The notes beneath the pieces were generated by a model. That model saw nothing but the letters and a program-made list of their open reading frames with translations, did not search any database and was not told where the DNA came from. Of a stretch of DNA of 64,000 nt, positions 2,064-54,039 are shown one piece after another. Within the stretch, counting starts at the first letter, position 1. Each line of letters begins with the position of its first letter. The translations under genes and the position numbers were made by a program. Origin of the DNA: Thalia democratica (lineage: Eukaryota); NCBI GenBank assembly GCA_965202585.1, contig OZ241827.1:48298001-48362000 (forward strand), written 5' to 3'.

Positions 2064-3254
2064 TTAACTAAATAAAGAGACTTTGTAATCAAATTCCTTC
2101 TGTTTACACAGTTCTGGTTTCTCCAAAAATATAGAGATAGCCTCCAACTTCACGAGATCAAACACACTATTGCAATGATGGATTATTCTAAATCTGGATA
2201 TGTCATATTTCCTAGTACAATCTCTATTATTTATTAGATGTTCTGCAACTGAAGATCTTTTTGCTGCGTTTTTTGTTGCTATTGTCTTAATTTCAGGTTC
2301 TTGTTCAATGAGTTTCAATACACAAGCAGGTAGATGTTCTTTTATCCTGGTTTTTAAGTGCCTAGAGGTCTGACCGATATAGCTCTTTTCGCAAGAGCAA
2401 TTAAACTTGTACACTATACAACTTTTGTCTTGGTCTGGTATCGGGTCCTTCAACTGCACTTTTAATAAAGATTTTGAAAGAAATATAACTCTTGGAAGCA
2501 CTTGATTGTAAGATGTTTTTGTTAAGTCTTTTACTTTGCTCTCAAATACTCGTGATTTTTCTCCAATATAAGGTATTTTTAAAATTGCTGTGAACTTCTC
2601 CGGTCCAAATAGCCTAGGTTGGTTTATGTTATTGTGGTGTGATTTTATCACCTTCTTAATCAAATCTGGTGGGTAACCATTTTTTATTAAAATTTCTTTT
2701 ATTCTCTCAACCTCTGAATGAAGTAATTTTTTCGAACAGATTCTGTATGCTCTATGGTACAGTGTTTTGATTAGGTTTACTTTTCGTTTCTTACTACAAA
2801 ACGATTGGTAGTGTAAGTATTGCCCAGTGAAAGTTGTTTTTCTATAGACATTCGTTAAGAAGCTTGTTTTATCTTTTATTATTAGTATATCTAAAAATGG
2901 TAGCTGGTTGTTCTCTTCTACTTCTCTAGTAAAAGAAATATTTTTATGTAAAGAGTTTAATTTTTGAAAAGTAGCTTCATTTTCACTTTCTATAACCAAA
3001 CAATCGTCAACGTATCTTATGTAGACAACCTGTGAAGACAAATCGTCAGCAATTTTGGATTCTAAATATCCGATAAAAATATTCGCAAGAGTAGGACCCA
3101 AAGGTGACCCCATGGCCACGCCGTCTATCTGACTGTAAATTGTATTATTGAAACTAAACTGTACATCACTCATTACTATTTTCATCAGCTTTATAAAATT
3201 ATTCTTCTCTAAGTTAGGTTTTCTTATTTCATATAATTTGTCAGCACTTACCAA
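2064..3254 (-). mobile_element. Penelope-like retroelement, 5'-truncated RT + GIY-YIG endonuclease ORF
   Basis: The 396-aa ORF has RT motifs QIDGVAMGSPLGP and YVDD, the PLE thumb region (FLDILI...TNVYRKTTFTGQYLHY) and a GIY-YIG domain (IVYKFNCSCEKSYIGQTSRHLKTRIKEH...LEAISI...KPELCKQKE). It starts at TTG after a stop, so the N-terminus is missing. Confidence 0.93.
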
Positions 3255-6200: not shown

Positions 6201-6603
6201 AAATAACATTTCTTTGTTTAACTTTTTACAGTTCTTTTTGTACCACATACATTAAAAAAAAAGATATCTTAAACAAATGCTAAAGTAGAAAAAAATAAGT
6301 TATTAGTTTTATGTAGTTTTTAGTTCATACTTGTTATAAGTTTCTATTATAATTTCTACTTTTCATAAAAGTCTAATTTTATCAAATTTTAATTCAATTT
6401 AATAAAACATATTTAGTCTAAGTATTTATACATTAAAAATTGAGTTTAACTGAAAACAACAACTGTAATTCTAACCTATTTTCGCATGATAAAAAGTTTT
6501 CAAAAGACTGTTGTAGTCTTAAATGTTACTTTTAAAAAAATTTTAAATTGTTTATATTGTAAAATTTATTAATTATATATTATTTTAAATTTTATAAAGT
6601 AGT

Positions 6604-8539: not shown

Positions 8540-10622
8540 GCTATACTACAAAAAATAAAACTAAGTTATCTAGACTTATAAAACCTTCAGTATTTTATTA
8601 CCTTTGTTTTTATCAAAAGACACAGTAAATATTTAATTATTAACCTTTCTCAGATGACATCTTTAATATGTAACTAGTGACATCATTATATTTGCGTTCA
8701 ATAGCTAGCTTAAACAAGATAACTCTAGTACAGTTTAGATAAAACATTTTTTCTCTAATGTTACGTTTTAAATTACCGTATTTTTCCATAAACATTTTAT
8801 AGCAAATTTTTTAATATTTCGAGAATAAAAAGATTATTTTTATTTGAATTTTGATACATAAAACTTTTATACCAATAACCATCTAGACATATTTTTACAA
8901 GGTTTTGTCTAACTAGTTTAGAAACTTCTAACAAAACAATAAAGAAACTGAGTATTTCACAAAAAGTTTTGAAAATTCCAACTTGTTATTGTAAATACTG
9001 AAAACAAAAATAAGTATAATAAACAAACAAGAGAAAATTAAAATTTTTAAGTAAATCAATATTTTCAGCAGCACCTCCTATAAAATAGTAATAAATATAT
9101 GTGAAGTCAGCTAACTATTGTAACATATCTCTTTTACAAGAGTTATACGACTTTTAATTAAAACAAGTTGTACAAACATGTTTTAGTTTACAACTTTACT
9201 ATAGCAAAAAGCATTCAAAAGTAAGTATTTCAATCCTTAAATTACTTCTTTTACAAGTCGGTGACCTATAGAAAACCTAATAAATTCTTCTATTAGATTA
9301 AACCGTTTGAAATATTTGTATAAACATTTTTAAGGCTTTACAGCATAAAAATAAAAGTGTTAAATAATTCAAAGTCCCGTCATCAATAAAAATGTTTGTT
9401 GTTGAAAATTTACTTATTTCCTTTTTGAACACTTTTAGACTTTATCTAAGAACCTTTATTTAACCATCACAAACATTGTTTGATATCAATAGATAGGTAG
9501 CTTAAAAGATATATAAATACAGGTCCTTTATACAACTTTTTAAATATGGCTTTAGATATCTTCAGCTATATAAATTATAAAATCTATACTTATAAAAACC
9601 GAATGCAAATAAAGATAAAATAGTTTTCTACCTAAAAGGTAGTAACTTTTGAAATTAACTATAACAAGTTACAAGTCCGTTGTTTGTCGTTAGATATGTT
9701 AAAGATGAAATATTTTTCAAACAACTATTTAAGACATAACTAATTTGTATGCATTCAATCGTTTAAGTTGCACGTTTTTTCTAGAGTATTCTTTAACTTA
9801 AAAACCCTTATAAAACTAAATTACACTGGTCTTTAGATTACTAGACTACTCAAAAAAATATTAAAATATTTACATAATAATAAGACTTTAACTAATAAAA
9901 AATTAAACTTAAAATAGTATTAATTATATAATTAGTTTTAAAAAATATAAAGTAAATTGGAATGCTTTTAACTTTGTAGGAAGTAAATATGATGTTTTAA
10001 AGTTTTGTACTTACCATATTAAAATGTTTTAGTAAAAAAAAGTAAAATGTTTTAACTTAAAAATTAACAAAAATTAAGTTTCTAATTATAAATATGTGAT
10101 TGGATGTACTTTTCATGGGTATTGTAGTATCACACTAATTTTTCTTAATAAAGAAAGTTTATAAAATTCTGAACATTTTAAAATATTTTTCTCACATACT
10201 TGTTTTCAGATTTTACTTTTAGACTTTAATTGAAATTTAGGACGTCCAAACTTATTAGAAAGAAAAAATTTCCAAGAAAAAAAGTAAAAGTTTTTCTAAA
10301 TTGGACTCCACGGCCCTTTATTTACTATAAAACAAAATAATAAATAATCATAAACAAAGTACAGAAACTTTATTTGACTTAGATAACCTTACTGTAGGTG
10401 AACTGATTTGTTTATTCATTTGATTCTTGCTACTTTAGCAAAATATTGAAATTAAAACATTGAGAAGAATTATTTTTAGCTCAGCACAAAATGAAATGAT
10501 TATTTTTAGAGTTGCGGATAACTCTACCTACAACATAGTTAAGTCACCAAAAAGTAATAATTTAAACTAGCCTAATAATATTTATTTTAGTAACTTAGTT
10601 TATTGAACACAATAAAAAAATC

Positions 10623-10698
10623 AGCGCTCAAACATTTCGGTCAAAGGACTCTATGCATAGAAAGATCTTTGGTCATCGAGCTACACATCAAGGGATTC
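10623..10698 (-). repeat. Unclassified ~80-bp dispersed repeat, diverged copy 2
   Basis: GCGCTCAAACATTTCGGTCAAAGGACTCTATGCATAGAAAGATCTTTGGTCATCGAGCTACACATC aligns with 30871-30940 (GTGCTCAAAATACTTGATCCTAGGACTTGGTGCATGAATAAAAACTTTCGGTTATCGAGTCGCACACC). Confidence 0.5.
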
Positions 10699-11769
10699 GA
10701 AACCGTTAACATACTCAAATGCAGTAACTTTATTTTAAAAGTTTTTTTTTGTTATATGTTTTAATATCCAGCTGTAATTAATGCAATACTTTAAGTGCAT
10801 GATGTATCAAAATATTATGATACTTTAATTCTAAACCAAAACAGCATGTTGCTTTAAAATACTTAAAGTAATGTATTTCGATACAAATCTTTTAATAGTT
10901 TTTTTTCTTAAAAGTTAAATTTTTACTCTTAAAAAAAATTATAACAACATTTTAAGTAAATAAGTAGTCTTTGGATATTCGTGGCTGCAATAGTACTGCT
11001 CAATTTTTACTGACTTAAATTTGAGTACTGTTTAATTTTAATTTAAACTGGTTTTAGCTTTACTTAAATATTCAAAACATCTACCTGTTGTATGCTTGGG
11101 TGGGATTTAAATTTCATATTCAAAATTTTGCGTAGTGATAGAAGTTTAAATACTATTACCGTATTGCTGTATTATTCCTCATTTGTGTAAATAAGTTTAC
11201 ATAATACTAATAAAAAAGATACTAAAAAAGTTCTAATGCAGCCAGCTCAGTAAAATTGATTATTAAAAAGTATTTTTTTACATAATTTCCACTGACCATA
11301 TTTGTGAGCCTCTATTCTTTTAAGGTTCACAAAACAATTTTCTCATACCTATTTGTTAATAAATCCTTTTAATATTTTAACTATTTTTGCTATTTAGTGT
11401 CAAAACTTTTTTTTTCTGTAAAAAAATCTTAATATCTTATTGTACTTTAATAATAAACATAACTATTTAAAAGTTTTCACATTGAGTTCCTTTATCAAGT
11501 TTAAAACAAGACTCGTAGTTAAAAACAGTTGAAAGTTTATTTATTTTTAAATATTTTTTTTTAATATAAATAGAAATTATGCAATGTTTTTAACTTAACT
11601 AGTCTAATTCAGAAGCTTATACTAACTAAATTATAATATTCAACGATAACAGAGCTTTATATTGACACTATTAAATTTAACATAGAACAATACAGATTAC
11701 AACTTGTTTAAATATAGTATTTTTAAACAACAAATTTCATAAACATAAAAAACTTTGTTTTGATAAAAA

Positions 11770-12110
11770 AAGACATCATTGATAAGTTCAGTTGTCACTG
11801 TGCTATAGATAAAGTGGGAAAAGATGTTGATATTATTTACAATTAGATCATCATGTGGCGAAAAACATTGAAAATTGGATCAAGACTGGAAAACTTGTTT
11901 GACAAACAAAGAAATTTTTTTGTTTGAAATTAAGTAGGTTGTATTGGACAATCATGAGTCGTCCATGATTTTATACCAATAACTTAACGTTTCATAATAC
12001 GTATGTAGTTTAGAGTTTTTTAGTTTTGCTTCAATATCCTAGATAGTATAACTATAAATCTAAAAACTCAATTCATTAAATAAATAAAAGAATATTTAAT
12101 ACATTTTTTA
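11770..12110 (+). mobile_element. Possible highly decayed PLE GIY-YIG remnant
   Basis: Fragmentary frames DIIDKFSCHCAIDKVGK and CIGQS resemble the PLE motifs VVYKFxCxCxxxYVGKT and SAIGQHL. Many stops and frameshifts. Confidence 0.3.
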
Positions 12111-13635
12111 CTTAAATGCGAAACAAAAAGTTATCGAGCTTTTTACAATTCTTATTAATTTTTTTAAAAGGTTATCGTTGTGTTCTACTTTTTTTTTGTA
12201 GCCTAAATATTAAAGCTGATGTTATAGAATCGATGTGTCAAATTCAGTACTTTAAAAATCTCTAACATTTATGCAGTTTGTTGTTTGAAATCTTTTATTA
12301 AAGTTATGCACTAATAAATAAAACAACTCACTACAATTTATCAAACTAGAAAGGTTATAAAACTTTTATACTAACTAATTTTAAGTAAAGAATTATATTT
12401 TTAGATATACTATGCTTTTTAGTGAGCACTTTACTTAAAACTTGTAAATAGATAGTTAAATAAATATTTTTAATACTAATTAATACTTATAAGTAAATAC
12501 GTTTTAACACAAATTTCAGAAATTAGTGCTAAAAAGGTATTCGACAGCAATAAACTAACAGAGACAGAAACTATTGTTGTACAGTTTTATCGAATATAGT
12601 CTATCCTATTTCTGGATAAACAAAAAATAAACTATTGTTAATAATTAACATTGTGTAATATATATCTAAAAATAAACTTGCTTTTAGGTATTTTTTTCAA
12701 ATTGTTTAACAGAAAAAAAAGAGTGTTTTTAGTAGATTAAATTTTGTTTTGTACCCGCTTAGAATAGACAAAAATAAATTCAGTATTTTGTCAAAAAAAT
12801 CTTTTATTCATTTTTCAATTGTATATTCAATCTAATGTAATATAATTTATTTATTTTTTTGTTTATACAAAAATAGACTATATTTGGTTAAACAGCTTAT
12901 TATATACACTTTTAAAGAAAATGTTATACAATGTAGTTTTGTTTGTAATTAGGTTTTAAAACGATTTTTTTATTACTAAAATTTTATAATAGAAATATTT
13001 TTCCATATAAAGAGTTGTTTTTATTTTAATTATTTAGTTTTTTTACTAGATAGTTGTCAAAATTGCTGCTATTTATTTTATTTTTTAAACATACTCTGAT
13101 TTAGTTTGCTTCTAGCTTGATTTATTATTGTTGAACATTCTAAAAGGTAAAATCTTTCCAATTTTTATACAATAGTAAATTATTTTTAATTTAGCTTGGC
13201 AGGCTCAGCTAGTTATCTTTTGTAATGTCAATCTATTTTAGCCAAGCTGGTTCATCCAAATGCACAATACTTAAAATGTAATGTATTCTAAATAATATGG
13301 ATATATTTCAAAATATTTTTGTGAACATTTTTAAAATTCATATTTAAATTTTCAATATTTTACTTTTTTATATTTAAATAATTTTAGTAAAAATGTGTCA
13401 TTTAAACTAGATACATATTTTTTACTTTATTTTTAAATTATTATGTTTTTAATTTTTGTATTAAACTTTAAATTTAAGAAAAGGTTGAAATGTCATTGTT
13501 TTATTGTTGTTGTTGATAAGTCTAAAATAGTTGAAATGATATCATCAGTTTCTTGTGAAATATGATGATAAGAACTTAGGTCATCAAAATTATAGACTTC
13601 TCAGAGCATAGCTAGAGTGTAGTTTTGAATATTTA

Positions 13636-13870
13636 CAGGGTTACCACTCACTCAGGGTACCCAGGGAAACTCAGGATATTTTAAAATTCTAGAAAATATC
13701 AGGAAGACTTAGACTAACTCTAGATAACTCAGAATATTATGGCATTTTTTTAAACTCAATTTGACTCAGGGTATTTTTGATTTCTTTAAACACCTTTAGA
13801 TAATTTAAAGATTTTAAAATATATCAGGGTAGAATTTTTTCTAGAATGAGATTTAGTTGATCCAGCTTGA
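13636..13870 (+). mobile_element. MITE fragment with CAGGGTTACCACTCA end and ACTCAGG subrepeats
   Basis: CAGGGTTACCACTCACTCAGGGTACCCAGGGAAACTCAGG. Related ACTCAGG-rich sequence occurs at about 52750-53035. Confidence 0.45.
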
Positions 13871-13919
13871 ATATTGTATAATTAATAATCCGCTTATAAT
13901 ATTTTATAAAAAAAATATG

Positions 13920-14480
13920 TCATAAATCTTGAACTTTTTAAAATTTTGTTTCTACAAAATTTTCCTAATATACCAAGATAAATTTCCTGAAAGTTTGAGG
14001 CGATTATCCCAAAAAATTGTAGGACAAAATTAGTTTTTTATGATTTCTATTTATTTGCTGTTTTAGTTTTTGCCTCCCTTGAGGAACCTATTATACTCTC
14101 TAACTTTAACCGGCTATATCTCAAAAGTTATCCAGAGTTTTCCAAATATGTAAAAAGATTCTTGCACCTAAGTTAAAATTCTACAAAACAAAATTAAATT
14201 GTACAAAAGTGATTAACTCCCTATGCCTTTAAATATCACTCATACACTTTTGTGAAAAAAAAAAATGGTTAGAAAATTAAGGAGAATATGAATTTCTAGT
14301 GAATTAGTCTTTTAATGCTTTTTTGGTTTTGCCTTTTATTAGGAACATTTTGAGCTCACCGAATTTGGTTGCTTATATCTTTGTAAAGTTATTTTATTTT
14401 TTTAAGACTAAAAAGGTCTGATAGATTTATTAAAGTTCTATAGGATCGACTTGTAAAAAATAAGGTTGATGCCTATGCCC
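13920..14480 (+). mobile_element. Two tandem partial Kolobok-like MITE ends
   Basis: Family-typical internal motif GCCTCCC..GAGGAACCTATT, with right ends CCCTATGCC(T)TTAA at about 14229 and CCTATGCCC|TTAA at 14480. Confidence 0.55.
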
Positions 14481-14859
14481 TTAATTTTGTCGTCCAAATG
14501 CAGCAGAAGGTTTTTTGGAACAGTCCCTTTTTGCTTAATAGTGGAAGAAGCTTCTTTAGTTATCTATTAAAATGTTTTTTAATATATGCAATAACTAAAA
14601 TTGACAGAATATATTTTTATACCACCACTATATATTAAAACAGCAACTATTATTGATAAATCAGCTTGACTGATATTATTTATTTTTACAGCTCTAACTT
14701 TAAAGAAAATCAAAAGTTAAAATTAGCTGTATACCTTTTTGATAGCACGCTTGTGCAATTGTTGCTCAGCTAATGATGGAACATCCAAATCTTAATTGCA
14801 AGAAAAACTAAGAGGTGTATTAGAACAATCTTGAGTTTCTGTCACTGATTGGTTGGTTC

Positions 14860-15300
14860 TTAGATTTTTTGCCTATATTTTCCTTATGTTTCATCATTTT
14901 TCTGATGTTTGTTTTGTCTAAAGCAGCATAAGTAGCTACTTAGTCAGTTTTCATGCTTTCAAGATACTGCAAGTCAGTTTCAATGGTGTTTTATCTTTTT
15001 GGGATAGAAAAGATTGTAGAAGTTTTTACTTGTTCATGTTCTTAACAGTACCTCTAGGCCATAAGTGCATGGTATATTTGCCTTTATTACCTTTGTATTT
15101 AAATGCTGACAACTTGTTCAGAGCAGTACTAGACTTTTCTTAATAAACAATTTTGTTAACATCATGTTTTGCAGAACTTTTGTGGTTTTTTCCTTATTTT
15201 TTCACCTACTAGTTTTTTTCCTATTTGATTTATAACAAAGCAGTACTTCCAAGGAAATTGGCAGTCTGCTACCATTTATATTTAAGTAAGATGGACCTGG
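14860..15300 (-). mobile_element. Decayed hAT-type (hATm-like) transposase N-terminal fragment
   Basis: Across frameshifts and stops it reads INGSRLPISLEVLLCY...SSAKHDVNKIVY*EKS...MHLWPRG...TDLQYLESMKTD*VATYAALDK, which resembles recalled hATm-type transposase N-termini (GSxLP..VL; YL.SM.TDR.A...D). Confidence 0.45.
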
Positions 15301-17459
15301 TGACTTGGGAACTGGCCAGAAAAGCACGGCGTCAGTTTAGCTTAAAGTGACATTTTAGCATGGAATTTATTTATTTTTTTTTTCTCTGCTTAAATAAAAT
15401 CTGTACTACTGTGTTTAAAAATCTAAAAATAAACCATGCAGCATGTAAACTAAAAGTAAACAAGCTCTAGATGTGTTACAAGTTTTTGCTTTAATTAAAA
15501 CTAAAATGAAGTATGTTCAGAAACTTTATTAATTTATTTTACTATGTAATTAAAAAAAAAAAAAATTTTTTATTCATATTTTTGACATAAAACAATTTTT
15601 ATAAAAAACCTACCAATATATACAAGCTCTAGATTGTTTCTTGAAACTTTTTTATAGTGTAACTTTTAGTGTAAATTTTAAATATTATGTAAGATATATA
15701 GAGATTAATAAATATTGATAAACAATTTACCTTTTTTTTTTACAGGCTCTAATAACTTTATAGCCTATTAAAAATTTACTTGTTTCATTTCAAATATAGT
15801 TAGCTATAAATATCATAATACAAAAAAGTCTTTGTGCATATTTGACACTTTGTGCAAAAGTGTCTTCGTGAATTTTTGACCTCATCAAAAGAGTTAGAAC
15901 TAATTCTCGCATATATTTGTCAGTTAACTTGATAATTATTTACTTAAGTAATTGAGCATCATTTAAATGAATATTTTAAAAGATCTAAAATTACTCTGTG
16001 CTTAAGTGAGGCTGTTCTTTTCTGACACCTACCCAGGACTAACCATACAAACTTTGATATGTATCCTAGGTGGAACTTATCTTTATCAAATAATAATAAT
16101 ATTACTAGCAGTCTATAATATTTTTTTAACTCAACTAGACTAAAATTAAAACTAATTAGCTGACTTTAAACAAAACATCTGTAAATATTGTTTTTGTTTT
16201 AAAGGAAATTATGTTAAAACGATAAAAGGACTTAACAAAATAAAAGCACTACAACTGAAAATATATTTGAATTTTGTTCAACTAGCTGCTGTACTGATTA
16301 TACTTGCACTTACTATTTAAGATCTAAATAAATATTTATTTTATTGGCCTAGTTTTCTTACTTCATTTTTGCAAGACAATTTTATTCAATTCGATATTCA
16401 ACAAAATGGAAAACTTGCACACAAGTAAGACAAAATTAATTAAATGATAAACTTATTTGGGAGATAAAACTGTATAATTTCCACTGTTTTAGTTTGCTTC
16501 TTCCCTAAGAAGCTAGTTGAATTTTCCAAGTTTTACAAACTGAAGCAAACTTGTATAAAAATTATAATATATGAAAACAACCCTCTGTTGTTCAGCGTAT
16601 AAAAATACAGATAAAAGCAAAATTTTCAAATGTTTTCAATTAAATTAGCATATTTTTGGTAAAAGCTAGGAAGCTAATTATTTTTGTTTAGCTTATTTAC
16701 ATGATTTCCCACACTAAAAAAAATTATTTTTTACTATAAAACTCTAGGTCCATGCAACAGATGCACCTTAGTTTCCATTAAATATAGCATGGAGCTTAAT
16801 TTATATCTCTGATGAGTGTAAAACATACTATAAAAGCTTAGTCTTTTTATTTTTCTAAAAACAGTTTTATATTGAAAAATTATTTAATTAATAGTACATT
16901 ATAGAAAAGAAAATTACAAAAGAGTTGGTACCAATATATAAATACATTGTAATTAAGTACTACAAAGAAAATTAAACATTACTATCAAAATTAGTTATCT
17001 ATATGTTGAGGTTGAAAAATTTAACAATATCAAAGAGGCACAAAGAACAGTCAATTTTGAATTTATTTCAATGATTTCTTTTTTATTTATTAAATTAAAA
17101 ACTTAAGTATGATGATGAAAGCAATACAAAAAGTTTGTTTTGTTCCTTGCATATCTTTTGCAGCTGTTGCAAAGAAAATGTCATGCCAGATTTAAAATTA
17201 AGGTCAATAAGTTTGTATTTGAAACTTTTTACATAAATGTCTGTAACTTTTAAGTTAATTAAAATGTATACGTTCTAAAACAACTGAATTATAGTTTGTA
17301 CTTTTAGCTTTCATATAAGAACTAATGTTAAATTTTGTAGAAAGGTTTTTACTCCTCTATGCCCCTAATATTGATAAATATAATTATAAGTTAAAAACCT
17401 AATAAATTGTTGTACTATTTTTTTCGATTAAATTTCAAAAACAAATTTTTCTATTTTAA

Positions 17460-18544
17460 GGGCATATGGGGTGGAGGTTCAACTTTTTTTTTTACAAAAA
17501 TTAACATTAGCAATTATTTCAAAGCTTATAGTATATACTGTAAGAAACTTTTTACAGAACATTTTTTTATAGAAAATTTTAATTAACTTTTGAAGTATAA
17601 CAAGTTATGTAAAAAATTCTGATACAACCATATGGAATCAAGAACTTTTAAAATAAGAAAAATGTATTAAAAATATATATTTTCCTTCATTTTTTTAGCA
17701 TTAAAATTTTCAGGAAATGTATTTTTCAATATATTGGTTTTTGAAAAAAAAGTCAAAAAAAAATTTATGACCAAAATAAGAAAAAAAAAAAGTTTTTTGT
17801 TTATTTTAATATTGAAAAAAAGTTTCACAAAATTTAAAAAATATGTTTCCTACAAGTTGTTTAAAATTTATTAAAGATTTTTCTGAAAAAGCTTAAAAAC
17901 AATTGCTCAAAAACTGAAGGAGGAGATAAATTTTTAGTGAAATAGTCTATTTTTGCTCTTTTAGTTTGAGCCTCCCATAAAGAACCTATTGAAGGCTCTA
18001 ACTTTGATGGCTAATATCTAAAAGTAACTTTGAATTTTAACAAGCGGTAAAAAAATGGTTGCCACTTTACCTGGAATCCTGGAAAAACCTGGATTTTGAC
18101 AATTTAGGCAAAAAAAAAACTTGAAAAACCTGAAATTTAAGAAATTTTGAAAGAAACCTGGAACTTTGAACAAAAAACCTGGAATGTTTAAGAATTTTAA
18201 CATGTTCAGTAGTAACATTTCGGTTAGACTTAAAAAATTTATCATATAGATAAAAAAAATTATCATCACTAATAAAATTTTTATTAAAAAATACATTTTA
18301 AGTAGCTTTACAATATCTTTTCAATCTTTTTATACTATTGAACACAGTTTTTTACCTTAATTAACTTTACACTAAAAATAGACCCAAAAATGTGTACTTT
18401 TAAAAACCTGAAAGAAATTTGAAAAACCTGGTACAAAAATTTGAAAAAAACGAGTGGCAACCCTGTAAAAAGTAACAAGTAGCTTATTCAATTATGTAAT
18501 GAATAAGACCAAATTTAAGAAAAAGTGTTTTACCCCCTATGCCC
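17460..18544 (+). mobile_element. Kolobok-like MITE (TTAA TSD) carrying a nested MITE
   Basis: TTAA(17456-59)|GGGCATATGGGG...CCCCCTATGCCC|TTAA(18545-48). RR...YY termini with a TTAA duplication are the Kolobok signature. Confidence 0.8.
18054..18465 (+). mobile_element. CAGGGTTGCCA-family MITE with 6-bp TSD, nested in the Kolobok-like MITE
   Basis: TAAAAA|AATGGTTGCCA...TGGCAACCCTG|TAAAAA. The interior (AAAACCTGGA repeats) matches the copies in nudC introns. Confidence 0.75.
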
Positions 18545-18639
18545 TTAACTGAGTTTTATCCTAAATTTAAAGTATTTAATTTTTTGGTTTTAATATTTGT
18601 AAACCACATTTTTTAGTCTATAAAAGTACAATTTTAAAA

Positions 18640-21600
18640 ATGCTAGAATTGCCAGATGAATTGAAATTAAACTCTTCTTTGATAATGAAGATGTTTCATA
18701 CAATTCCACACATAAACTTTAAATTTGAAATTCTTGATCAAAATTACCAGTTTATGGAAGGAGATTATTTTGAGGTAAGTCTTATAAGGTATATTAAAAA
18801 AAAAACCTAACCTATTAGATGATTCCAAAAAAGACTGTTATATATTAAAAGACAGTTTTATAAATGTCATATATTAGATAAAAAGATAAAAAAGTTAACA
18901 TGTCAATCAAATTTTTTTTTTCTGTTAAAAGTTTTTGTTATTACATAACTCCCAAAAAAAAGTTTTGTTAACATAAGTTGAAGCCTAACAACTTTATTTT
19001 TTAGAATATATATTGCAATTTTAATTTTATTTATTTAGTACAATTTTATGTGTTCCTTTTTTTTTGACAGTGCCTCATCATGATATTATTTGTCCCAATA
19101 TTATTATTGCTCCTTACTATGTGTGGGCTTTTTATTTTCTACTGCTGTGTTTCTCTCTCAGGAAAGCAAAGGAATGCTAACAGCAAACCAGAAAGCTCTG
19201 CATGTTATTGCTCTGTCTGTGTATTATTTGTTTTTATCACATTAACTATGTTAGTTTATACTTAAAATGTACATTTAACTTCTAGTATTAATAACATATC
19301 ACAACCTTAAAAAATATTTTGTAATTTTTATGTCTACTTAGAAATACTAAAAGTGGTAGTTTTATTTGACACTACTTTACAGATTAAAACAATTTGGTAA
19401 TTTTTAATCATTAAACTTTTAATATTGTTAACTTTTTACTGCTGTAAGAATAAATTTTAAATTTTATGTTTGGTACTTAATTTATTTTTCAAAGCTACAC
19501 TATGAGTTTTTGTATTTTTCTTGAATAATGGTGTGTTTAATTCAAAGTAATATAACTTAAGAGCATATGGGGGAGCGTCCACCTTGATTTTTACAAGTTG
19601 ATCTTATTTTGTAGAGTTTTATCTGAGCTATCAGACCTTTTTAACTGCTTGAAAAAATTCAGAGTATTTTTTGAGATATGTTATTATATCTTTTTTAATA
19701 TTTTTACCAAAATTCAAAGTCTTTTAAACTATAAAAGGAATGTTTCCTGAAAATTTGAGGTCTCTATTTCAAAAAATGAAGAAGAAGATAGACTTTTAGT
19801 GATTTTTTTAAATTTCCAAGAAAACTGACTCCGAAAAGCTTGCGGTCCATACGTATGTATTGGAAACTTTTTATAAAAATTACAATATTGCAAAAGTTAA
19901 ATAATATTTTTTAATTCTATAAAAACTGGCTTGTAATTTGTACTTTAAGCTTTCATATAACATACAATGTTATTTTTACTAAAAATAATATATCAGACCT
20001 CCCCTATGCCCTTAATAATACTTTGATCATTCTACTTTGATAACAAATATTTTTCTAAACGGTAAGTAAAATTTAAAACAGCACTGTTGTTGGTATACTT
20101 GGGTTTTCTACCTTACAACTTTACTCTAAACAGCAAAATGTTGTTGAAGATTTACAGAATTTATCTCATACTGAAGTTTGTTTGTTATACACATAGTTAT
20201 TATAATTCTTATGTATTCTAACTTTTTTTGGGAAAAGTATTTTAATTAAAAAGTTTATTTTATTAGTAGTTTATAAAGTGTAGGTAATATTATTATCTTT
20301 CGATTTTACTATTTAATTTGAAAAACTAAATAAAAAACTTTTAATTATTCTAAATGTAAACGATATGTATTTTTTTAGTACAATTGCTTTTCTTTCGATA
20401 TTCTGCATAGGAATAAATTTGTTTCTGTTTTTAAAGTAATCACTAGAATTAGTTTTGTCATTTATGGTAATTAATACTTGTACAAATTGAATAGAGTGAC
20501 TAGAATAAAAGTTTAATTCTAAAATTTCAAAAATTATTGTTATTTTTCTGAATTGAATTCTAAAACTAAGTAATTTTTTATTAAAAATAAATAGTTTTTT
20601 ACTTGTTTAAATTTTTTATGTTTATTGAACAGAATTGGGTATATGATGGTAATAACACTGAACAATCGTTTAATAAAACACAATTTTTCAACAATTACCT
20701 CAATGACTGTTCTGAAGGATTAAATATTTTTTCTACGTATAGGTATGTGTATAAAGTTTCAAGTTATAAAGTTATATTTTTAATAAGAGGATACAGTACA
20801 ATTTATTCCTAACAGTTTTTACGGACTTCTGTCACTTGGAGGAGTCATTTTGTTTACAAGTTTGATGTCCTTGTTTTCAGTTTGCTGTAAATCAAAGTGC
20901 TTGTTGATCACGTTAGTAGATTTCTAGTTGCGAGTTTATACAAATTTCTATTTTTGTTAAGTTATTAATATTTAGAAAAATTTACGTAATTAGTAATAAA
21001 CAAAAAAAACTCTTCCTTTAATTAACTTTAAAGTGCCTAGAAGATTATTTTAATATCTCTAAAATTTCTTTTTTATAATAGTTTTTTTTTAATTTTTTGT
21101 TTGTTTTTAGTTTTTAATATTGTATTAACAAATACAATTCATTTTTGAATAATGAAATCTGAAAAATGGAAATGAATAACTTTTACAACCTCAAGTATTT
21201 TTTATTACGAAATGTTTTTTATATTTAGTTTGAAGTCACAGTTACAAGAAAGTTTTAAGTATATAACATTAAATATATTGTATAGTTAGTACAAATTCTT
21301 CAAGTATACATGCTTTAAAAGTATAAGGTAAAAAGAATATTTAGGAATAGATAAAACGAAACTATGCTTTGCATTTTGGTAATTAGAAATGTCCTATGTT
21401 TTAAAAATTTGCTTAATTTATATACAAGCAAAACCCTACTTAACTCAAAAATTAAATAAAATGTCTAATATTTTAACTAAAAATGTCATATATTTATATT
21501 TTAAGTTTTTAATTTACTCCAATTAAATTTTTCAAAACAACTTTACTTAATTTGATTATTTTTAGATATAAAATTTTTAAGCAGTATGAAAAGCAATTAT

Positions 21601-24600
21601 AGCTAGATTAAAATTGCTATAATTATGCAGAATTTTCATATAAAATAAAGAGCATTTAGGTCAGCAGAATAACGTGTTTAAAATTAGGTAATGTTGTTAT
21701 AAACCCACCTTTATTACCTTGACTTTAAACTAGAAAAGGGCAAAAAAATGCATTTAAAAAGTTAAGTTTTAAAAAATTCGAGTTGGTTTTCAACTGCGTG
21801 ATAATGGTGAAAAAAGAATTGTATAAGTGTATGTATTTAAGATCGTTTTAAAGATATAATTTACAAAATTAAACTAAACAGCATCTTTAGTATGCGATTG
21901 TATGCAAGCTTATAAATTATTTATTTAACTTTTAATGCTTATAAAAATATATAAATACTAATTTAATTGTGAAATGTTTTCTTTTGCAACTCTGGGTTGT
22001 TATCCATGCTGATTAAGGAATTTTTAAACAAATAATGATTTTTAAGTCTATATATCATGCTTATTGGCTAATATTTTGAAGTTATTTTGTTGTTAGAATT
22101 AAGAATAGTCACTTATTTGGTTTTCTACTTACTTTTTCCTTATAATTTTTTATAAGTAAAATAAGCTTCTATACAGTAAAAGTTAAGTATAACAAAAATT
22201 TATTTATATATTTTTCAAGTGATATTCCTTTCAAAATCATAGAGCGGTGCTAATTATTTAGAATATTTAATATTGGATACTTCGCAATTATTAGATAGAA
22301 TAATTGCATGTGTATAGTGTTTTGTATTAGTATATTAATTAAAACAGGGCAACATCAGTCAACTTTATATGCTTGGTCGTCGTCTATTTGTGCTTTACGT
22401 TCGAATTAACATTGAATGTGGTGAGTTGAAGTAGTTTCAAGTACTTTTTTTGCATACAAACAAACCACTTCGTAACAAGTATGTGCAATAAAAACTATTT
22501 TGAGAAATTCAATGTGTAGGTCATTTAAGAGAAAAAATTGTGGCTTTAAACACAATAGTTTATACAAATACGTACTTTATTGTTTGCTTTATGAATGTTA
22601 TACTTTTTTGATTTTCCATGAATTATATTTTCATGGATTTTATATATCTAACATAATAAGCCAATACAGTTTTCAAAAACAGAATGTTCTACTTTTATTG
22701 GCTTGTAACTTTTTCGTCAGTATCAAATTTTTATATTCTTAATTAGAACTTAATCAATTAATTATTTTTGATCGTTTTGCTTATAAATTTTGAAGTATTA
22801 AATATTCAGTTAATTAACAGTAAAAAGAAATGTGTAAAACAAATTCGTTATAAAACTTTTGAAGTGTTTTAAAAAATGAATGTTTTATTTTAGTTTGTAA
22901 ATAAATTCTAAAGATAAAATCATCCATTGATAATTTTAATGACAAAGTTAAGTGTTGTAAAAACTAAATTTATTGCGTAAAAAGTTTTTATCAACTGAAT
23001 AGTTTTTAAATGTATAAAAAGTTTATAATTAAGAAAAAAAAATTAAAACAATAAAAATGGTACTCAAATAAATTTTTTGTCAAAGCGGTGAGTATTTTAA
23101 ATAGTATAAATTTAACACGATTAAAAATAAGTTTAAAAGTTGAATTATTAGTACTTTTTTGCGTAGTAAAATATTTCTTTTATAAAACTGAATTTTTTGA
23201 AAATTCATACATTATATGTTTTATTTTTATATTATTAAAGTAACGCTTAATAATTTTTCAAAACATATTTTTTAGTTTAAAAAAAAAGATGACTTTATTA
23301 AAGGAATTATAATCAAATTAACTTTAGATTTTTTTGTTTAAACAGGGTATCGCAGACTACTGCCAGAATCCTAAAAGATCTTTAGCGAGGTTTTTGGTTG
23401 GCAGTAATTTACTAGACAGAAAGTCCGCAGCTTACCACATATTCTGCCCGTCTAACAACATCGATTCAACTTACGACAATCTATTTCCAGCAACAGTTAG
23501 TCTTTATTTTTAATTCTATCTTTTTAAATAAACTTTTGTTACTTAAAGTAGTTTTTTTAGTTTGATTAGTATATATATTTGCAACCATTTTTAACTTAGT
23601 AAAAGGATAAAACTTTCGATTATTGTTTTTTAAATCCTAGCACGAATTGAAATATTTTTTACACACTTAAATAGTTTTTGAAATATGTTTAATAACAGAA
23701 TAAAAGCCTATAATAACACACGATTTAAGCTGTCATTTTTGTTATCTTATTGGTAATATTTTAAACCTGGTTAAAAAAACAAGTTTAAAATAAGGATGGC
23801 TGCTATTATGACTTATAAACGTGAATAGATGATGTCACAATGGTATTTATCATCGTTTAAAAAGGAAAAATTTATAAAATTTTACTGGAAGTGACAATTC
23901 TCAATATTTTCTCGAATAACTTACAACACCCGTTTTATTTATACATTTTTTATTTTCTTAATTTAAAAAAAATAGTTTATTACGTAACAAAAACAATGCA
24001 ATTCTAAAGTTTGCTTAAATAATACTTTAAGTTATTTTGTTTTGTGAATGAAATTTGTACATATCTGTAACCAAACAACCTTACAACATATTGTGTTTAG
24101 GTCTTTTTACATGGTTCAGATAATATTTTAATATCTTTATATGCTATAGAACTTGTTAAAGTTATGCAATGTAGTGTTAAGCTTTTTTTTTGCATTATTC
24201 TCAAGTTACGCACTTACAATACAATTTAAAAAATTAGTTTTATTGATAGTTAAAGTTTTGGTATGCTTTAAACGCCATGCAACATTTAATCGATTAACTG
24301 TTATAAAAGTTTCTGTGTGTAACCGGAACGAAAAACTGATTAATCACTTCTATAACGTCCAATCAATTTTCAAGCAGACGGACGAGTGCTCCGATACGAG
24401 CGCGTTGTTCTATGACGTCATAGGCGAGTTGTGCGAGGAGCGGGCTCAACCCTCGCTCCTCCTCATATCGTCCCTCCTCCTGCTGGCCGTCTTCATCACA
24501 ATACTCAGCTGCGCGTCGCCCATCACGTGGAGGAGGTTCAGCAAGTTGAAGAAGAAAAGCATGAGGTTTTTTTTTTGTTATTCCATTCATCAATTATTCT

Positions 24601-44100: not shown

Positions 44101-45074
44101 AGGAAACAACTACTTAGCGTATAGGCCAACTACTAGCGACTAAATCATAACGTCACTAATACAAATCACCAAACAGTAGCAAACAAAGTATAAACACAGA
44201 GAATATTTAGCTTAACAAACACTCTTTAAGAAAAAAAGGAAGTATCAACCACAAAGAAGAAACTCCTTTATTAACATTTCATCGCTATTCATTAAGTTTT
44301 GTAAATACATAGAATTGTAGGCATGGGTATAGATTACTTTAAACCTACACTATGACCCATTATAAAAAGATAATAACATTAACCTAACTAACAATGATAC
44401 TGATATTAGATAATGCTTAGCGCACCTCTATATAAAACTAGGCATGACATTCAATATATAAATTGTATAAAAGAACAGTTGCTAAAACGAACAAAAATAC
44501 AAAGAACATAAACTTTAGAAATTACTTTAAATGTCCTCAAAACTTTTACACTTTAAATTCTCAGAAAACATACTAAAGAACGTATAGCATAATAATACAT
44601 TTAACTACTTAGAATTTAAATCAAAAGACTGCTTATAATAAATAACATGTTTACAATTACATGTTTGTATTTTTACATAATACAAACATTTACATACATA
44701 TAACATGTTTACATGTGATACAATAACATGTATTCTCGAACATATAACAACTGTATATATAGTTAGAACAAAAACTTTTAAAAAATTGCAAATTATGCAA
44801 AGGTTACTAATTTAAAATTTTATTATTTTAAGAAACACAGTTACACTGTTTCACCGCAAAGCGGATTTTCAAGCTATAAATCTGTAATAAAATGATAATG
44901 TTACAAATGATAAAAAATATAAAATTTATGTGAGTTAAGTTATATGTTGAGAACATTAAAATTAAAAAAAAATATGTATACATATATAAAAGATTTTATG
45001 AAATGGTCTGGTTTATAGTGCTCGACAAATTGAATTGGAGCTAAATATTTATTTGATTATATAAAAAACCATAG

Positions 45075-45139
45075 TTTAGATTTAGACGACCGTTTCGTAT
45101 ATGAGATATAAAATTCCATATACTCCTCAATAAGCTAAA
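45075..45139 (-). ncRNA. Type I hammerhead ribozyme copy with C3U core substitution
   Basis: Minus strand reads UUUAGCUUA UUGAGGA GUAUAUG GAAUUUUAUAUCU CAUAUAC GAAA CGGUC GUC UAAAUCUAAA. Confidence 0.75.
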
Positions 45140-45425
45140 GTTTATTACAGTGTTAAACATAAATTTAAAATTTAAAAATTTTTATAGTAAAGTTTGGAAA
45201 AGGTAATATTAGAAGTTTTTTTTAAACAACTAGAAAAATCTTTAAACATTTAAAACATTTTTATAATATAACCTTTTCAAATCTTTCCAAAATGCATAAA
45301 TTAACAAGTTCAGCGTATTTTTTCAAACTCAGCTTACTGTACAATAAACTCTATCTATTCTTACTACGTCATAATTACTATAAAATTTTTCAAAAGCTTA
45401 ATTTCTGTTTAACATTGTTATAAAC

Positions 45426-45490
45426 TTTAGCTTACTGAGGAGTATATGGGGTTTTATATCTCATATACGAAACGGTCGTCTAAATCTAAA
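45426..45490 (+). ncRNA. Type I hammerhead ribozyme with intact core
   Basis: UUUAGCUUA CUGAGGA(45435-41) GUAUAUG-GGGU UUUAU AUCU-CAUAUAC GAAA(45469-72) C GGUC GUC(45478-80) UAAAUCUAAA. All core residues are present; helix II is 7 WC bp plus 4 further pairs, helix III is 2 bp, and helix I is 3+5 bp. Confidence 0.85.
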
Positions 45491-45774
45491 CTATTGTTTT
45501 TTATATAATCAAATAACTATGTATACATATATATATCAAGAAAATATTAATGCTATAAAACTTTTAATAAATATCTTATTAGATAGACACTCCGTCAATT
45601 TTAATTTAAACCCATTAGTTAAAAGTATATTAGTTAACCAACTACTTGGCCTAATAATTTTCCAACTCCATATTAATGGTAGTTTTGGTTTTTCAACGTC
45701 AAAACCTTATTTTTATTCACTCTTCATCATCAACTTCAGAATATCTAGAGTAAGTTTTAATTTATGAATTCATG

Positions 45775-45860
45775 GCCCCCTGTGGGTCCTTTACTGCTCA
45801 TAGCCCCTTAATTTCTGTAATGGCTCCCAAGGGGACCACTTAGCCCAGTTATGAACCCCT
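45775..45860. mobile_element. hAT-like MITE end fragment
   Basis: Ends CAGTTATGAACCCCTG (CAGGGGTTC-type TIR) after GC-rich GGCCCC subrepeats. Confidence 0.4.
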
Positions 45861-46081
45861 GGTATAGTTTATACAGATTTATTTCTAACGTACTTTATGT
45901 AGTTATAAATATCCTTTATCAAACGTAGCTTTATAATGACGCATGGCTATGTATAAATAAACTAGTCTACTCTCACTAAATATCATTTTAAGTTAGCCTG
46001 CTATATAAGTACTATAAATTTGTTCTGTTACGTTTTTAACTAAAGAATTTTAACATAAGTCACTTATTTTCAAATAAAAGT

Positions 46082-46118
46082 TTATTAATTAATTTCGTTT
46101 AGCGCATCCTCAGAATAA
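46082..46118 (-). ncRNA. Minimal type I hammerhead ribozyme motif downstream of a PLE
   Basis: Minus strand reads UUAUU CUGAGGA UGCGCUAAAC GAA AUUAAU U AAUAA: 5-bp helix I, intact core, palindromic helix III, about 280 nt after the PLE stop at 46395 on the same strand. Confidence 0.55.
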
Positions 46119-46394
46119 TATTGCTAAAAACTATTGATATTATAGTGTAATTTTAGTTATATACAATGAATTTGAAAAGTCTAGCTAAAAATAGTTACGT
46201 CATAAAGTATAAAAGTCTGTTTAAAAAAGTTTAAATTAGAATTGAGTTGTACTAAGCTAATTTGAAGTAATTTATAAGACAAAATTGCTAAAACAATAAC
46301 ATTTAAAGTAGTATTTTTTTTTACCTGAAACTAAACAAAAAGCACATTACAAAATACGACAAAAACGACAACAATAATACTACTAAAAAACACG

Positions 46395-46985
46395 CTATTT
46401 ATAAAGTTTTAAATTGTAAAAATCTCTTTGTTTGCAAATTTTTGACTCGCGAGTTCTAATAAACAAAGATTCTAGAACTGAGAGATGGTAGGTGTTTCGA
46501 GCTCGGGATAGAATTTCGAACCTACTATCCAGGTAGTTCTCGGCACAAACAGGGTTGTTGAGGAGGTGCTGATAAATAGCTGACTCTTCACCTTTAGGCT
46601 TCACGTCGTCATTAAAATTAAACCTTTTTAGCTTTTCGTGACATGCTGCTCTCGCCTGACGAGATGTTCGACCTACGTAGTCATTTCCGCAATGAAATTT
46701 TAATATGTATACTACATTACTCAAATCATGGGTAGGTGTGGCATCTATCACAATTCCGTTAAGCGGGCGGTTGGTTTTGTACACAACACGTAGCGAAACG
46801 CTATTAAAGGTGGATTTTATAGCTAATGAAGCTTGCTTAGCCAGTCTTATTGAGTGATCACCCATATAAGGAAGGCGGAGGTAGACTGGGCAAGGATGTG
46901 GGCCGAAAGGTAAGTGGTTCATTTTGGACTGAGTTTCCTTAATTGTCTTCTTGATGACTGTTTCGGGGTAACCTAATGAGAATAA
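46395..46985 (-). mobile_element. Penelope-like element, 5'-truncated (linker + GIY-YIG)
   Basis: LGYPETVIKKTI...YLRLPYMG...LRVVYKT...SNVVYILKFHCGNDYVGRTSR...SAIYQHLLNNPVCA...LSVLESLFIR...ICKQR. Confidence 0.9.
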
Positions 46986-53460: not shown

Positions 53461-54039
53461 ATGAGTTTTTTTACTTGCAACTCTGACAGTCAATCTGATG
53501 TCACAACATCTGATTCAGAAAACGAAGAAGAGCAAAAACCTTCTGTACAAAGCAAAGATGAAGAAGAGAAAGATGTTTCAAGAAAAAGAACTTTGCCATC
53601 ACCAATTGACGCAATCACTTCAGGTAAAGTTCCAAAGTTTGTCACAACTCATTTACGTGATGAATTGGACTGGGACAAAATTAAGAAGGAAGCACCACCA
53701 GTTCCTGAAAAAGAAATTAAACCTTGGGCACTCAACCCAGTCACCATACAATCAACAGCACCAAGTGACCATAGACCTGATATTGCTTTGACCAAGCAAG
53801 TTCCTCAGACGTTGGTTCCTAAAGAAAAGGTTGAGCAAGAAGATGTGCAACAACCTGAAAAGATAATTGATCATGCAATTAAATGGTCTAAAATGTACAA
53901 AGACACCACCACGCTCAAAGGCCGCCCAATAATGGATTTTGATGATCCAGAAATGAATACGTTTTGTTATACAGATGTAAATAAAGACAAAAACGCTTTC
54001 AAAAGAAGTACAGACAATAAAAATTCAAAAGATGATTAA
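53461..54039 (+). CDS. C1orf52: UPF0690/C1orf52 homolog (192 aa, single coding exon)
   Basis: Acidic Ser-rich N-terminus, KRTLPSP..AITS...PKF....DELDWDK...APPVPEKEIKPW and DHAIKWSKMY, matching recalled C1orf52 motifs (KRLPGP, IDWE...APEEPPKEFKIW, DMAIKWSNIY). AATAAA at 54067. Confidence 0.8.
   Translation: MSFFTCNSDSQSDVTTSDSENEEEQKPSVQSKDEEEKDVSRKRTLPSPIDAITSGKVPKFVTTHLRDELDWDKIKKEAPPVPEKEIKPWALNPVTIQSTAPSDHRPDIALTKQVPQTLVPKEKVEQEDVQQPEKIIDHAIKWSKMYKDTTTLKGRPIMDFDDPEMNTFCYTDVNKDKNAFKRSTDNKNSKDD

What the first reader, a model, noticed from the sequence alone, without database searches (positions are those of the whole stretch)
45049..45516. Head-to-head inverted pair of hammerheads: a self-masking ribozyme cassette
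Seen: a 468-bp unit of two ~140-bp inverted arms, each carrying the same hammerhead reading outward. The plus copy has an intact core; the minus copy has C3U. Inference: a transcript across the unit in either direction makes the antisense arm first, so the ribozyme would emerge into a ~140-bp duplex that blocks folding and could be diced. Only transcripts starting in the 184-bp spacer would self-cleave. The unit may be just the inverted terminal-repeat junction that PLE insertions are known to form. If it recurs as a discrete unit, it would be an ORF-less ribozyme-carrying mobile element or a promoter-position-dependent cleavage switch.
Basis: partly seen in the sequence, partly recalled or inferred. 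Interest (0 to 1): 0.85.

Follow-up and report, generated by a model that had tools for sequence, protein, structure and literature searches.

The report
Head-to-head hammerhead retroelement insertion scar
The inverted pair of hammerhead ribozymes is real, but it is one ageing insertion of an abundant small non-coding jumping element, and its back-to-back shape is the usual scar of Penelope-type insertion rather than a designed ribozyme switch.

Summary
Arms 45042-45190 and 45375-45523 are 149 nt long, 90% complementary and 184 nt apart. Each carries an outward-reading type I hammerhead motif; the plus copy has a complete core and the minus copy has C3U.

The pair is not a discrete cassette. 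It lies in a 529-bp insertion (44989-45517) flanked by an exact 16-bp direct repeat, which arises by chance about 1 time in 1000 in this window. The left copy runs about 60 nt further at its 3' end than the right copy, like the "tail" of Penelope-like element (PLE) insertions.

Reads of the organism show the arms and the right two thirds of the spacer at 200-500 times single-copy depth. In other copies, 45249-45516 is one continuous stretch. 45193-45248 is close to single copy, so arms and spacer do not travel together.

The best reading is a PLE-style head-to-head insertion of a roughly 328-nt hammerhead retrozyme family. The C3U change is private to this copy. Hairpin masking of a read-through RNA is physically plausible but generic to any inverted repeat. 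Transcription could not be tested.

The scan's earlier notes describe this architecture elsewhere in this genome, with 100- and 113-bp arms. This is ordinary: a new member of a known kind.

The parts
44973..44988 (.). Left copy of the 16-bp target-site duplication (TA-rich)
   Evidence: It is identical to 45518-45533 (family D3). An exact shared word of 16 or more occurs in 0.1% of 3000 flank pairs sampled from the window with the same geometry. The last 5-6 nt may instead belong to the element.
44989..45047 (-). Tail: 3' extension of the inverted (left) copy beyond the point where the right copy ends
   Evidence: It has no counterpart after 45517. Depth at 45010-45070 is 132,740 against about 72 for single-copy DNA. 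Family contigs continue leftwards past 45015 with a consistent sequence that matches the window at 24/30.
45048..45190 (-). Inverted, shorter copy of the element body (left arm), ending about 105 nt upstream of its cut site
   Evidence: This is the left arm of the 149-nt, 90% inverted repeat. A contig from another family copy matches 45007-45190 and then runs on unlike the window (X2 record 10).
45080..45136 (-). Hammerhead motif of the left copy, with C3U at 45130 and two changes in loop II; predicted cut 45085|45084
   Evidence: Most family depth has G at 45130, i.e. C3 on the element strand (table 3). Helix II drops from 11 to 8 bp.
45191..45226 (-). Inner inverted segment: a reverse-complement copy of 45249-45284 (the 5' start of the right copy)
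   Evidence: the repeat finder gives arms 45189-45226 and 45249-45286, 38 nt, 79% complementary, 22 nt apart. The local alignment is 28/36, with shuffle p about 0.003. This is tentative because the sequence is AT-rich.
45227..45248 (.). 22-nt linker between the two copies; origin unresolved
   Evidence: The 45193-45253 bin has a depth of only 879, against 20,000 or more on both sides. It has no significant match to the flanks or to the tail.
45249..45517 (+). Right-hand copy of the element (269 nt): body, hammerhead and 37 nt after the cut site
   Evidence: Family contigs match continuously from 45248/45249 to 45480-45516 (table 8, records 3, 4, 5, 11, 12, 15, 22). Depth is 20,000-42,000 throughout.
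45429..45485 (+). Hammerhead motif of the right copy with a complete core: C3 at 45435, G12-A14 at 45469-45471, C17 at 45480, cut 45480|45481. Helix III is 2 bp with a GGUC loop.
   Evidence: It is the only complete motif in the window by a descriptor scan.
45518..45533 (.). Right copy of the 16-bp target-site duplication
   Evidence: Several family contigs stop matching at 45516 while the contig itself runs on (table 8).

Best explanation
One retrotransposition event placed two copies of the same small, non-coding, hammerhead-carrying retroelement head to head at a TA-rich target. The family has a unit of about 328 nt and is an animal non-LTR retrozyme, i.e. a non-autonomous passenger of Penelope-like elements (PLEs).

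Mechanism (inferred from published PLE biology): the PLE enzyme cuts both target strands, and both 3' ends prime reverse transcription on element RNA. Two cDNAs therefore grow towards each other and are joined in the middle. Their 3' ends, which carry the ribozyme, face outward next to the duplicated target. The two cDNAs start at two alternative internal sites about 60 nt apart, which leaves a tail on one side only.

Shown here:
- the inverted arms;
- the 16-bp flanking duplication;
- the unequal 3' ends;
- the high copy number of the arms and the right spacer, against a near-single-copy centre;
- the continuity of 45249-45516 in other copies;
- the private nature of C3U.

The hairpin a read-through RNA would form is a by-product of this geometry. 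The copy is drifting (10% arm divergence, one ribozyme hit in its core) and is probably inert.
For: - Inverted repeat of 149 nt at 90%.
- Two hammerhead motifs, against 0 expected by chance.
- Weak but end-to-end Hammerhead_1 alignment with all core positions matching.
- Exact 16-bp direct repeat at 44973-44988 and 45518-45533, with chance about 0.001.
- The left copy runs about 60 nt further than the right, and that stretch is itself highly repeated and continues in family contigs.
- Depth is 20,000-42,000 over 45254-45497 and 132,740 at 45010-45070, against 879 at 45193-45253 and about 72 for single-copy flanks.
- Family contigs run uninterrupted from 45248/9 to 45480-45516 and start matching at varied 5' points, as 5'-truncated retrocopies do (table 8).
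- Adding the 96 nt after the left cut site (45084-44989) to the 232 nt before the right one (45249-45480) gives 328 nt. This equals the tandem unit given in earlier scan notes.
- Literature: PLE insertions often carry an adjacent inverted 5'-truncated copy and a 30-40-bp tail at one end, with hammerheads in the repeats (PMC8557442). A purified PLE protein cleaves and extends both strands and starts reverse transcription at two internal sites that define the tail (PMC11167929). Paired minimal hammerheads 100-700 bp apart on opposite strands were already reported (PMC4209133). Animal retrozymes have been argued to be non-autonomous PLE derivatives (PMC7229834; bioRxiv 10.64898/2026.07.22.740005).
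- A PLE-type GIY-YIG endonuclease remnant lies 0.9 kb away.
Against: - I could not fetch any other copy as sequence. The window has none, and two metagenome scans and one viral scan found nothing. The family picture therefore rests on one read laying summary and on unchecked earlier notes.
- The tail is about 60 nt, longer than the published 30-40 bp.
- The centre is not a clean junction. It has 58 nt of near-single-copy DNA with an inner 38-nt palindrome that the simple model does not predict.
- The TSD is low-complexity, and its last 5-6 nt may be element sequence.
- No contig showing the empty site was listed.
- The 10% arm divergence could also mean two different template RNAs, or two separate events.
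- The hammerhead is below Rfam's gathering score, and its secondary structure lies 10 kcal/mol above the ensemble even in isolation. Self-cleavage is unproven.
Confidence: 0.85

Rival explanations
1. A selected self-masking ribozyme cassette or switch. On this view the inverted arrangement exists so that read-through transcripts bury the ribozyme in a duplex, and only transcripts that start in the spacer cleave.
For: Hammerhead formation costs 93-99 kcal/mol in the whole-insertion RNA on either strand, against 12-13 kcal/mol for a single copy. Earlier notes list several head-to-head pairs in this genome.
Against: - The parts differ more than 20-fold in copy number.
- Arm lengths in the other reported cases differ (100, 113 and 149 bp, unchecked), as expected for a variable junction and not a design.
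- The arms have drifted to 90% identity, and one ribozyme has lost C3.
- A monomeric hammerhead with a 2-bp helix III is expected to cleave poorly anyway (PMC4209133).
- There is no RNA evidence.
Confidence: 0.03
2. Two independent events: one copy inserted next to or into another, or a one-off local inversion or duplication of a single copy.
For: The arms differ by 10%. The centre holds 58 nt that the family does not share, plus an inner palindrome, which could be debris from a rearrangement.
Against: A single exact 16-bp duplication brackets the composite, and no internal TSD is seen. Both arms share bases that differ from the family majority at 45055/45510 and at 45378/45187, which suggests one source. 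The geometry is exactly that published for single PLE events.
Confidence: 0.07
3. A MITE or foldback DNA transposon with 149-bp terminal inverted repeats that happens to contain a hammerhead-like sequence.
For: The locus has long terminal inverted repeats, a short AT-rich body, flanking direct repeats and no ORF.
Against: - A 16-bp TSD is outside the 2-10 bp typical of cut-and-paste families (my knowledge).
- The termini are unequal by about 60 nt.
- The centre is near single copy while the arms are highly repeated.
- Other copies carry 45249-45516 without the left arm attached (table 8).
Confidence: 0.02
4. The locus is an ordinary insertion scar, as in the best explanation, but has been co-opted as a hairpin-RNA source that feeds small-RNA silencing of the family.
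For: The predicted hairpin is very stable (MFE -197 to -202 kcal/mol for 545 nt), and it shares sequence with a family of hundreds to thousands of copies.
Against: No RNA run of the organism was available. Nothing shows transcription or selection, and arm mismatches accumulate freely.
Confidence: 0.03

Closest known systems
Penelope-like element (PLE) insertion structure: an inverted 5'-truncated copy next to the main copy, a tail at one end, and hammerheads in the pseudo-LTRs (Craig et al. 2021, PMC8557442; Mob DNA 2024, PMC11167929)
   Same: Head-to-head copies with their 3' ends outward, a one-sided 3' extension, a long variable-type TSD at a TA-rich target, and a hammerhead near the 3' end.
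   Different: There is no RT/EN reading frame inside, so the element is non-autonomous. The tail is about 60 nt rather than 30-40. The centre carries a 58-nt stretch with an inner palindrome.
Animal non-LTR retrozymes (Cervera & de la Pena 2020, PMC7229834; Li, Clavereau & Pollet 2026 preprint, 10.64898/2026.07.22.740005)
   Same: A small (about 328 nt), AT-rich, ORF-less, high-copy repeat with a type I hammerhead that has a 2-bp helix III and a 4-nt loop. The TSD is longer than 4 bp, and PLE remnants occur in the same genome.
   Different: This locus is not a tandem array. It has one ribozyme per strand, so it cannot release a unit-length or circular RNA. The cited papers do not describe inverted head-to-head retrozyme insertions.
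Minimal PLE hammerheads found as dual motifs 100-700 bp apart on opposite strands (Cervera & de la Pena 2014, PMC4209133)
   Same: Two motifs 343 nt apart (C3 to C3) on opposite strands, a long helix II (9-11 bp), and a short helix III that is self-complementary through G-U pairs and pairs between two molecules in cofold.
   Different: Here helix III is present (2 bp plus a loop), as in canonical metazoan type I motifs, and there is no bulged base before helix II.
L1 twin-priming inversions (Ostertag & Kazazian 2001; from my knowledge)
   Same: Both target strands prime cDNA synthesis, which gives an inverted segment inside a single insertion flanked by one TSD.
   Different: In twin priming the two segments are different parts of one RNA. 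Here both segments contain the same 3' part, which gives a true inverted repeat.

Membership tests
Hammerhead ribozyme, type I (Rfam RF00163) | Conserved catalytic core: C3 U4 G5 A6 N7 G8 A9, G12 A13 A14, the A15.1-U16.1 pair and H17 | tested here: met
   The plus copy has every position. The minus copy has U at position 3.
Hammerhead ribozyme, type I (Rfam RF00163) | Three helices around the core, with open ends at helix I | tested here: met
   The covariance model aligns over its full length, positions 1-45. The hand-built structure has helix I of 3+5 bp with an internal loop, helix II of 11 bp and helix III of 2 bp.
Hammerhead ribozyme, type I (Rfam RF00163) | Score at or above the curated gathering threshold | tested here: not met
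   The score is 17.5 bits against 34. There was no hit in the gathering scan or in the 801-nt scan.
Hammerhead ribozyme, type I (Rfam RF00163) | Self-cleavage after H17 | not testable with these tools
   The hammerhead fold lies 9.9 kcal/mol above the ensemble for the isolated motif. Published short-helix-III motifs cleave poorly as monomers.
PLE-style insertion | An inverted, 5'-truncated copy directly adjoining the main copy | tested here: met
   The definition comes from PMC8557442.
PLE-style insertion | A tail extension present at only one end | tested here: met
   44989-45047 is on the left only. It is about 60 nt, against the published 30-40.
PLE-style insertion | A target-site duplication bracketing the whole composite | tested here: met
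   16 bp, exact, with chance about 0.001.
PLE-style insertion | RT plus GIY-YIG endonuclease ORF within the element (an autonomous PLE) | tested here: not met
   No ORF of 50 aa or more lies within 44989-45517. The locus is therefore filed as non-autonomous and PLE-mobilised, not as a PLE.
PLE-style insertion | An autonomous PLE partner in the same genome that shares the 3' end | tested here: inconclusive
   ORF 46395-46922 (-) resembles GIY-YIG, HTH_animal and RVT_1 clusters (atlas score 0.97), but it has no Pfam hit and no adjacent hammerhead. No intact PLE could be examined.
Animal non-LTR retrozyme | A small (150-450 bp), low-GC, ORF-less repeat that carries a type I hammerhead | tested here: met
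   The unit is estimated at about 328 nt from coordinates, window GC is about 25%, and depth is 200-500 times single copy.
Animal non-LTR retrozyme | Tandem head-to-tail units, so that two ribozymes release a unit-length RNA | tested here: not met
   Not met at this locus: the copies are inverted, not tandem. Tandem arrays of the family are reported only in unchecked earlier notes.
Animal non-LTR retrozyme | Expression as linear and circular RNA | not testable with these tools
   No RNA run of the organism was offered.
MITE / foldback DNA transposon | Both TIRs and the body move together, with symmetrical termini and a short fixed TSD | tested here: not met
   Depth differs more than 20-fold between the parts, the termini are unequal by about 60 nt, and the TSD is 16 bp.

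The most novel reading that the evidence does not exclude
Penelope-type insertion places two copies head to head, so every such event creates a ready-made hairpin gene against its own family. If these loci are read through, for example inside introns, they could be a systematic, self-generated source of double-stranded RNA that silences the retrozyme family and masks its ribozymes. The insertion scar would then double as the family's brake.
Probability: 0.06. Interest if true: 0.55.

Novelty: new member of a known kind. Interest (0 to 1): 0.15.

Why it matters
It matters little on its own. The locus adds one more structural example showing that small animal hammerhead repeats are inserted by the Penelope-like machinery: an inverted partner copy, a one-sided tail and a long TSD. 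The link was proposed in 2020 and argued phylogenetically in a 2026 preprint, but the papers I read do not illustrate it with inverted insertions.

For annotation, the lesson is practical. Inverted hammerhead pairs in this genome should be masked as retrozyme/PLE insertion scars, not reported as new ribozyme devices.

Tried and rejected
- Rfam at gathering score on the whole window, and at E<=10 on 801 nt, found no hammerhead. Only a 94-nt query gave a weak hit.
- Sensitive blastn of the unit against the window returned only AT-rich noise, with no second copy.
- Exact-pattern scans of JGI metagenome contigs, with a 26-mer from the ribozyme and a 21-mer from the tail, and of viral contigs all gave 0 hits. 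I therefore could not align other copies or tabulate junction positions myself.
- The RNA-run search found no RNA run of the organism; only two metatranscriptomes came up, with a 0.00 share of words.
- The 'opposite strands' joints first looked like other head-to-head junctions. Worked through in element coordinates, they are internal deletions of 13, 32 and 79 nt in other copies, mapped across the reference's own inverted repeat. I do not count them as evidence for inversion.
- I tested whether the 58-nt centre is a diverged copy of the tail or a piece of either flank. There was no significant match. The only signal was the inner palindrome.
- The PLE endonuclease-like ORF 0.9 kb away is not part of the unit. 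Single-copy DNA (depth about 72 at 45864-45985) separates them, and there is no hammerhead beside it.

Full report
**What is there.** The repeat finder reports an inverted repeat with arms 45042-45190 and 45375-45523. The arms are 149 nt long, 90% complementary and separated by 184 nt. The alignment of the two arms shows 15 differences.

A 39-nt pattern spanning the hammerhead core occurs exactly twice in the 64-kb window, against none in 100 shuffles. One match is at 45435-45473 on the plus strand, reading CTGAGGA...GAAAC. The other is at 45130-45092 on the minus strand, reading TTGAGGA...GAAAC. Both motifs point outward. The predicted cut sites are 45480|45481 and 45085|45084.

**How good the hammerhead is.**
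- Rfam finds no hammerhead at gathering score on the whole window, nor at E<=10 on 801 nt.
- Given only 94 nt, Hammerhead_1 aligns over its whole length (45429-45485) at 17.5 bits against a gathering score of 34 (E 0.046). Every core position matches. The low score comes from a 23-nt insertion in helix II and an interrupted helix I.
- A hand-built type I structure has helix I of 3+5 bp, helix II of 11 bp, and helix III of 2 bp with a GGUC loop.
- That structure is 9.9 kcal/mol above the ensemble for the isolated motif.
- In cofold, two molecules pair through the helix III segment. This fits published metazoan type I and PLE motifs, which are thought to act as dimers and cleave poorly alone (PMC4209133).
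- A descriptor scan finds no other complete motif in the window.

**Boundaries.** An exact 16-mer, TA-rich, lies at 44973-44988 and again at 45518-45533 (family D3). Among 3000 pairs of flanks sampled from this window with the same geometry, 0.1% shared an exact word of 16 or more and 0.5% one of 12 or more. The insertion is therefore 44989-45517, 529 bp.

The two copies end unequally. The right copy stops 37 nt after its cut site. The left, inverted copy runs 96 nt after its cut site. This leaves 44989-45047 as a one-sided extension of about 60 nt.

**Family evidence.** No second copy exists in the window. Pattern scans of metagenome and viral contigs found nothing. The family picture therefore comes from laying the Logan contigs of four runs on 44400-46200 at 80% likeness.

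| Stretch | Summed depth (run X1) |
|---|---|
| 45864-45985 (single-copy flank) | about 72 |
| 45254-45497 | 20,055-41,964 |
| 45071-45131 | 15,362 |
| 45010-45070 | 132,740 |
| 45193-45253 | 879 |

- Much of the 879 can be spill-over from the bin's edges, so 45193-45248 is close to single copy.
- Contigs from other copies match continuously from 45248/45249 to 45480-45516 (records 3, 4, 5, 11, 12, 15, 22). Others begin at 45285-45335, as 5'-truncated retrocopies would.
- Several contigs stop matching at 45516 although the contig itself runs on.
- One contig matches 45007-45190 and then diverges (record 10).
- The right two thirds of the 'spacer' is therefore the body of the right-hand copy. 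The arms and the spacer do not form one repeated unit.
- At 45130 most of the depth reads G, i.e. C3 on the element strand, so C3U is private to this copy.
- A 240-nt contig from run X3, which is labelled as a different organism, covers 45084-45323 with 6 mismatches (record 19). The junction is therefore real and shared.
- Contigs that lose the match at 45015 carry a consistent sequence to the left. It aligns to the window at 24/30 down to about 44983, so the tail is family sequence too.

**Unit length.** The 96 nt after the left cut site plus the 232 nt from 45249 to the right cut site make 328 nt. That is the tandem unit given for a hammerhead repeat of this genome in the scan's earlier notes. 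I did not see those arrays myself. Alternative alignments of the low-complexity joint would allow about 314-335 nt.

**The centre.** Between the two copies lie 58 nt (45191-45248) with no significant match to the tail or to either flank. However, 45189-45226 is an inverted copy of 45249-45286: 38 nt, 79% complementary, with a 22-nt gap (28/36 and shuffle p about 0.003). Two readings fit.
- The inverted copy reaches the same 5' point as the right copy but lacks about 88 nt internally. Other copies show deletions of 32, 79 and 87 nt in the same stretch (joints 45182|45350, 45163|45322 and 45344|45432).
- Alternatively, the right cDNA snapped back on itself at its 5' end.

I cannot separate these readings, and the signal itself is modest in such AT-rich DNA.

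**Mechanism.** The geometry matches what is published for Penelope-like elements.
- Insertions are heavily 5'-truncated.
- An inverted 5'-truncated copy often sits directly adjacent, which forms inverted repeats.
- A 30-40-bp tail is often present at only one end.
- Hammerheads lie in the repeats (PMC8557442).
- A purified PLE protein cleaves and extends both strands of its target. It also starts reverse transcription at two internal sites, and the interval between them is the tail (PMC11167929).
- Paired minimal hammerheads 100-700 bp apart on opposite strands were noted in 2014 (PMC4209133).
- Small ORF-less hammerhead repeats of animals were named non-LTR retrozymes in 2020 (PMC7229834). 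A 2026 preprint argues that they are non-autonomous PLE derivatives (10.64898/2026.07.22.740005).

No ORF of 50 aa or more lies inside the insertion. An ORF 0.9 kb away (46395-46922, minus strand) resembles PLE-type GIY-YIG endonuclease clusters, but single-copy DNA separates it from the insertion.

I therefore read the locus as one PLE-mediated, head-to-head insertion of a retrozyme. That both strands primed cDNA synthesis is inferred, not shown.

In a transcript of the whole insertion, enforcing the hammerhead costs 93.1 kcal/mol on the plus strand and 98.6 kcal/mol on the minus strand. For a single copy it costs 12-13 kcal/mol. Masking is thus physically plausible, but it follows from any 149-bp inverted repeat.

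Nothing suggests design.
- The parts have different copy numbers.
- The ends are unequal.
- The arms have drifted by 10%.
- One ribozyme is damaged.
- Earlier notes list the same architecture with 100-bp and 113-bp arms (unchecked by me).

Whether the locus is transcribed could not be tested, because no RNA run of the organism was available.

**Verdict.** The locus is a new member of a known kind, and the scan has already met this kind several times on other DNA of the same genome.

Noticed in passing
window 46395-46922 (-): A 175-aa ORF resembles the GIY-YIG endonuclease end of Penelope-like elements (atlas score 0.97; neighbouring clusters carry GIY-YIG, HTH_animal and RVT_1). It has no Pfam hit, no RT remnant upstream and no hammerhead beside it. 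It is probably a 5'-truncated PLE fragment.
   Followed up: partly
window 45010-45070: The tail segment has 3-8 times the read depth of the ribozyme core (132,740 against 15,000-42,000). It may be shared with another, more abundant family, possibly the 3' end of the autonomous partner.
   Followed up: no
window 45681-45863 and 46047-46200: Two further very high-copy repeats sit just right of the insertion, with depth up to about 136,000 against 72 for single-copy DNA. The first is unusually GC-rich for this 25%-GC window. They were not identified.
   Followed up: no
window 44827-44887 and 44400-44643: More repeated segments lie left of the insertion, with depths of 3,600-22,500. The neighbourhood is a patchwork of repeats.
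   Followed up: no
window 45479-45484 / 45075-45080 and 45485-45497: The family has deletion variants next to the ribozyme cut site. A 6-nt deletion appears in about 4-8% of the depth, and a 13-nt deletion just after the cut site appears in several contigs.
   Followed up: partly
window 2064-3254 (-): A 396-aa ORF has a reverse-transcriptase (RVT_1) match (E 4e-08). Its retroelement class was not determined.
   Followed up: no
window 53461-54039 (+): A 192-aa ORF matches DUF4660 above Pfam's cut-off (35.4 against 27 bits). It is probably a host gene or exon.
   Followed up: no
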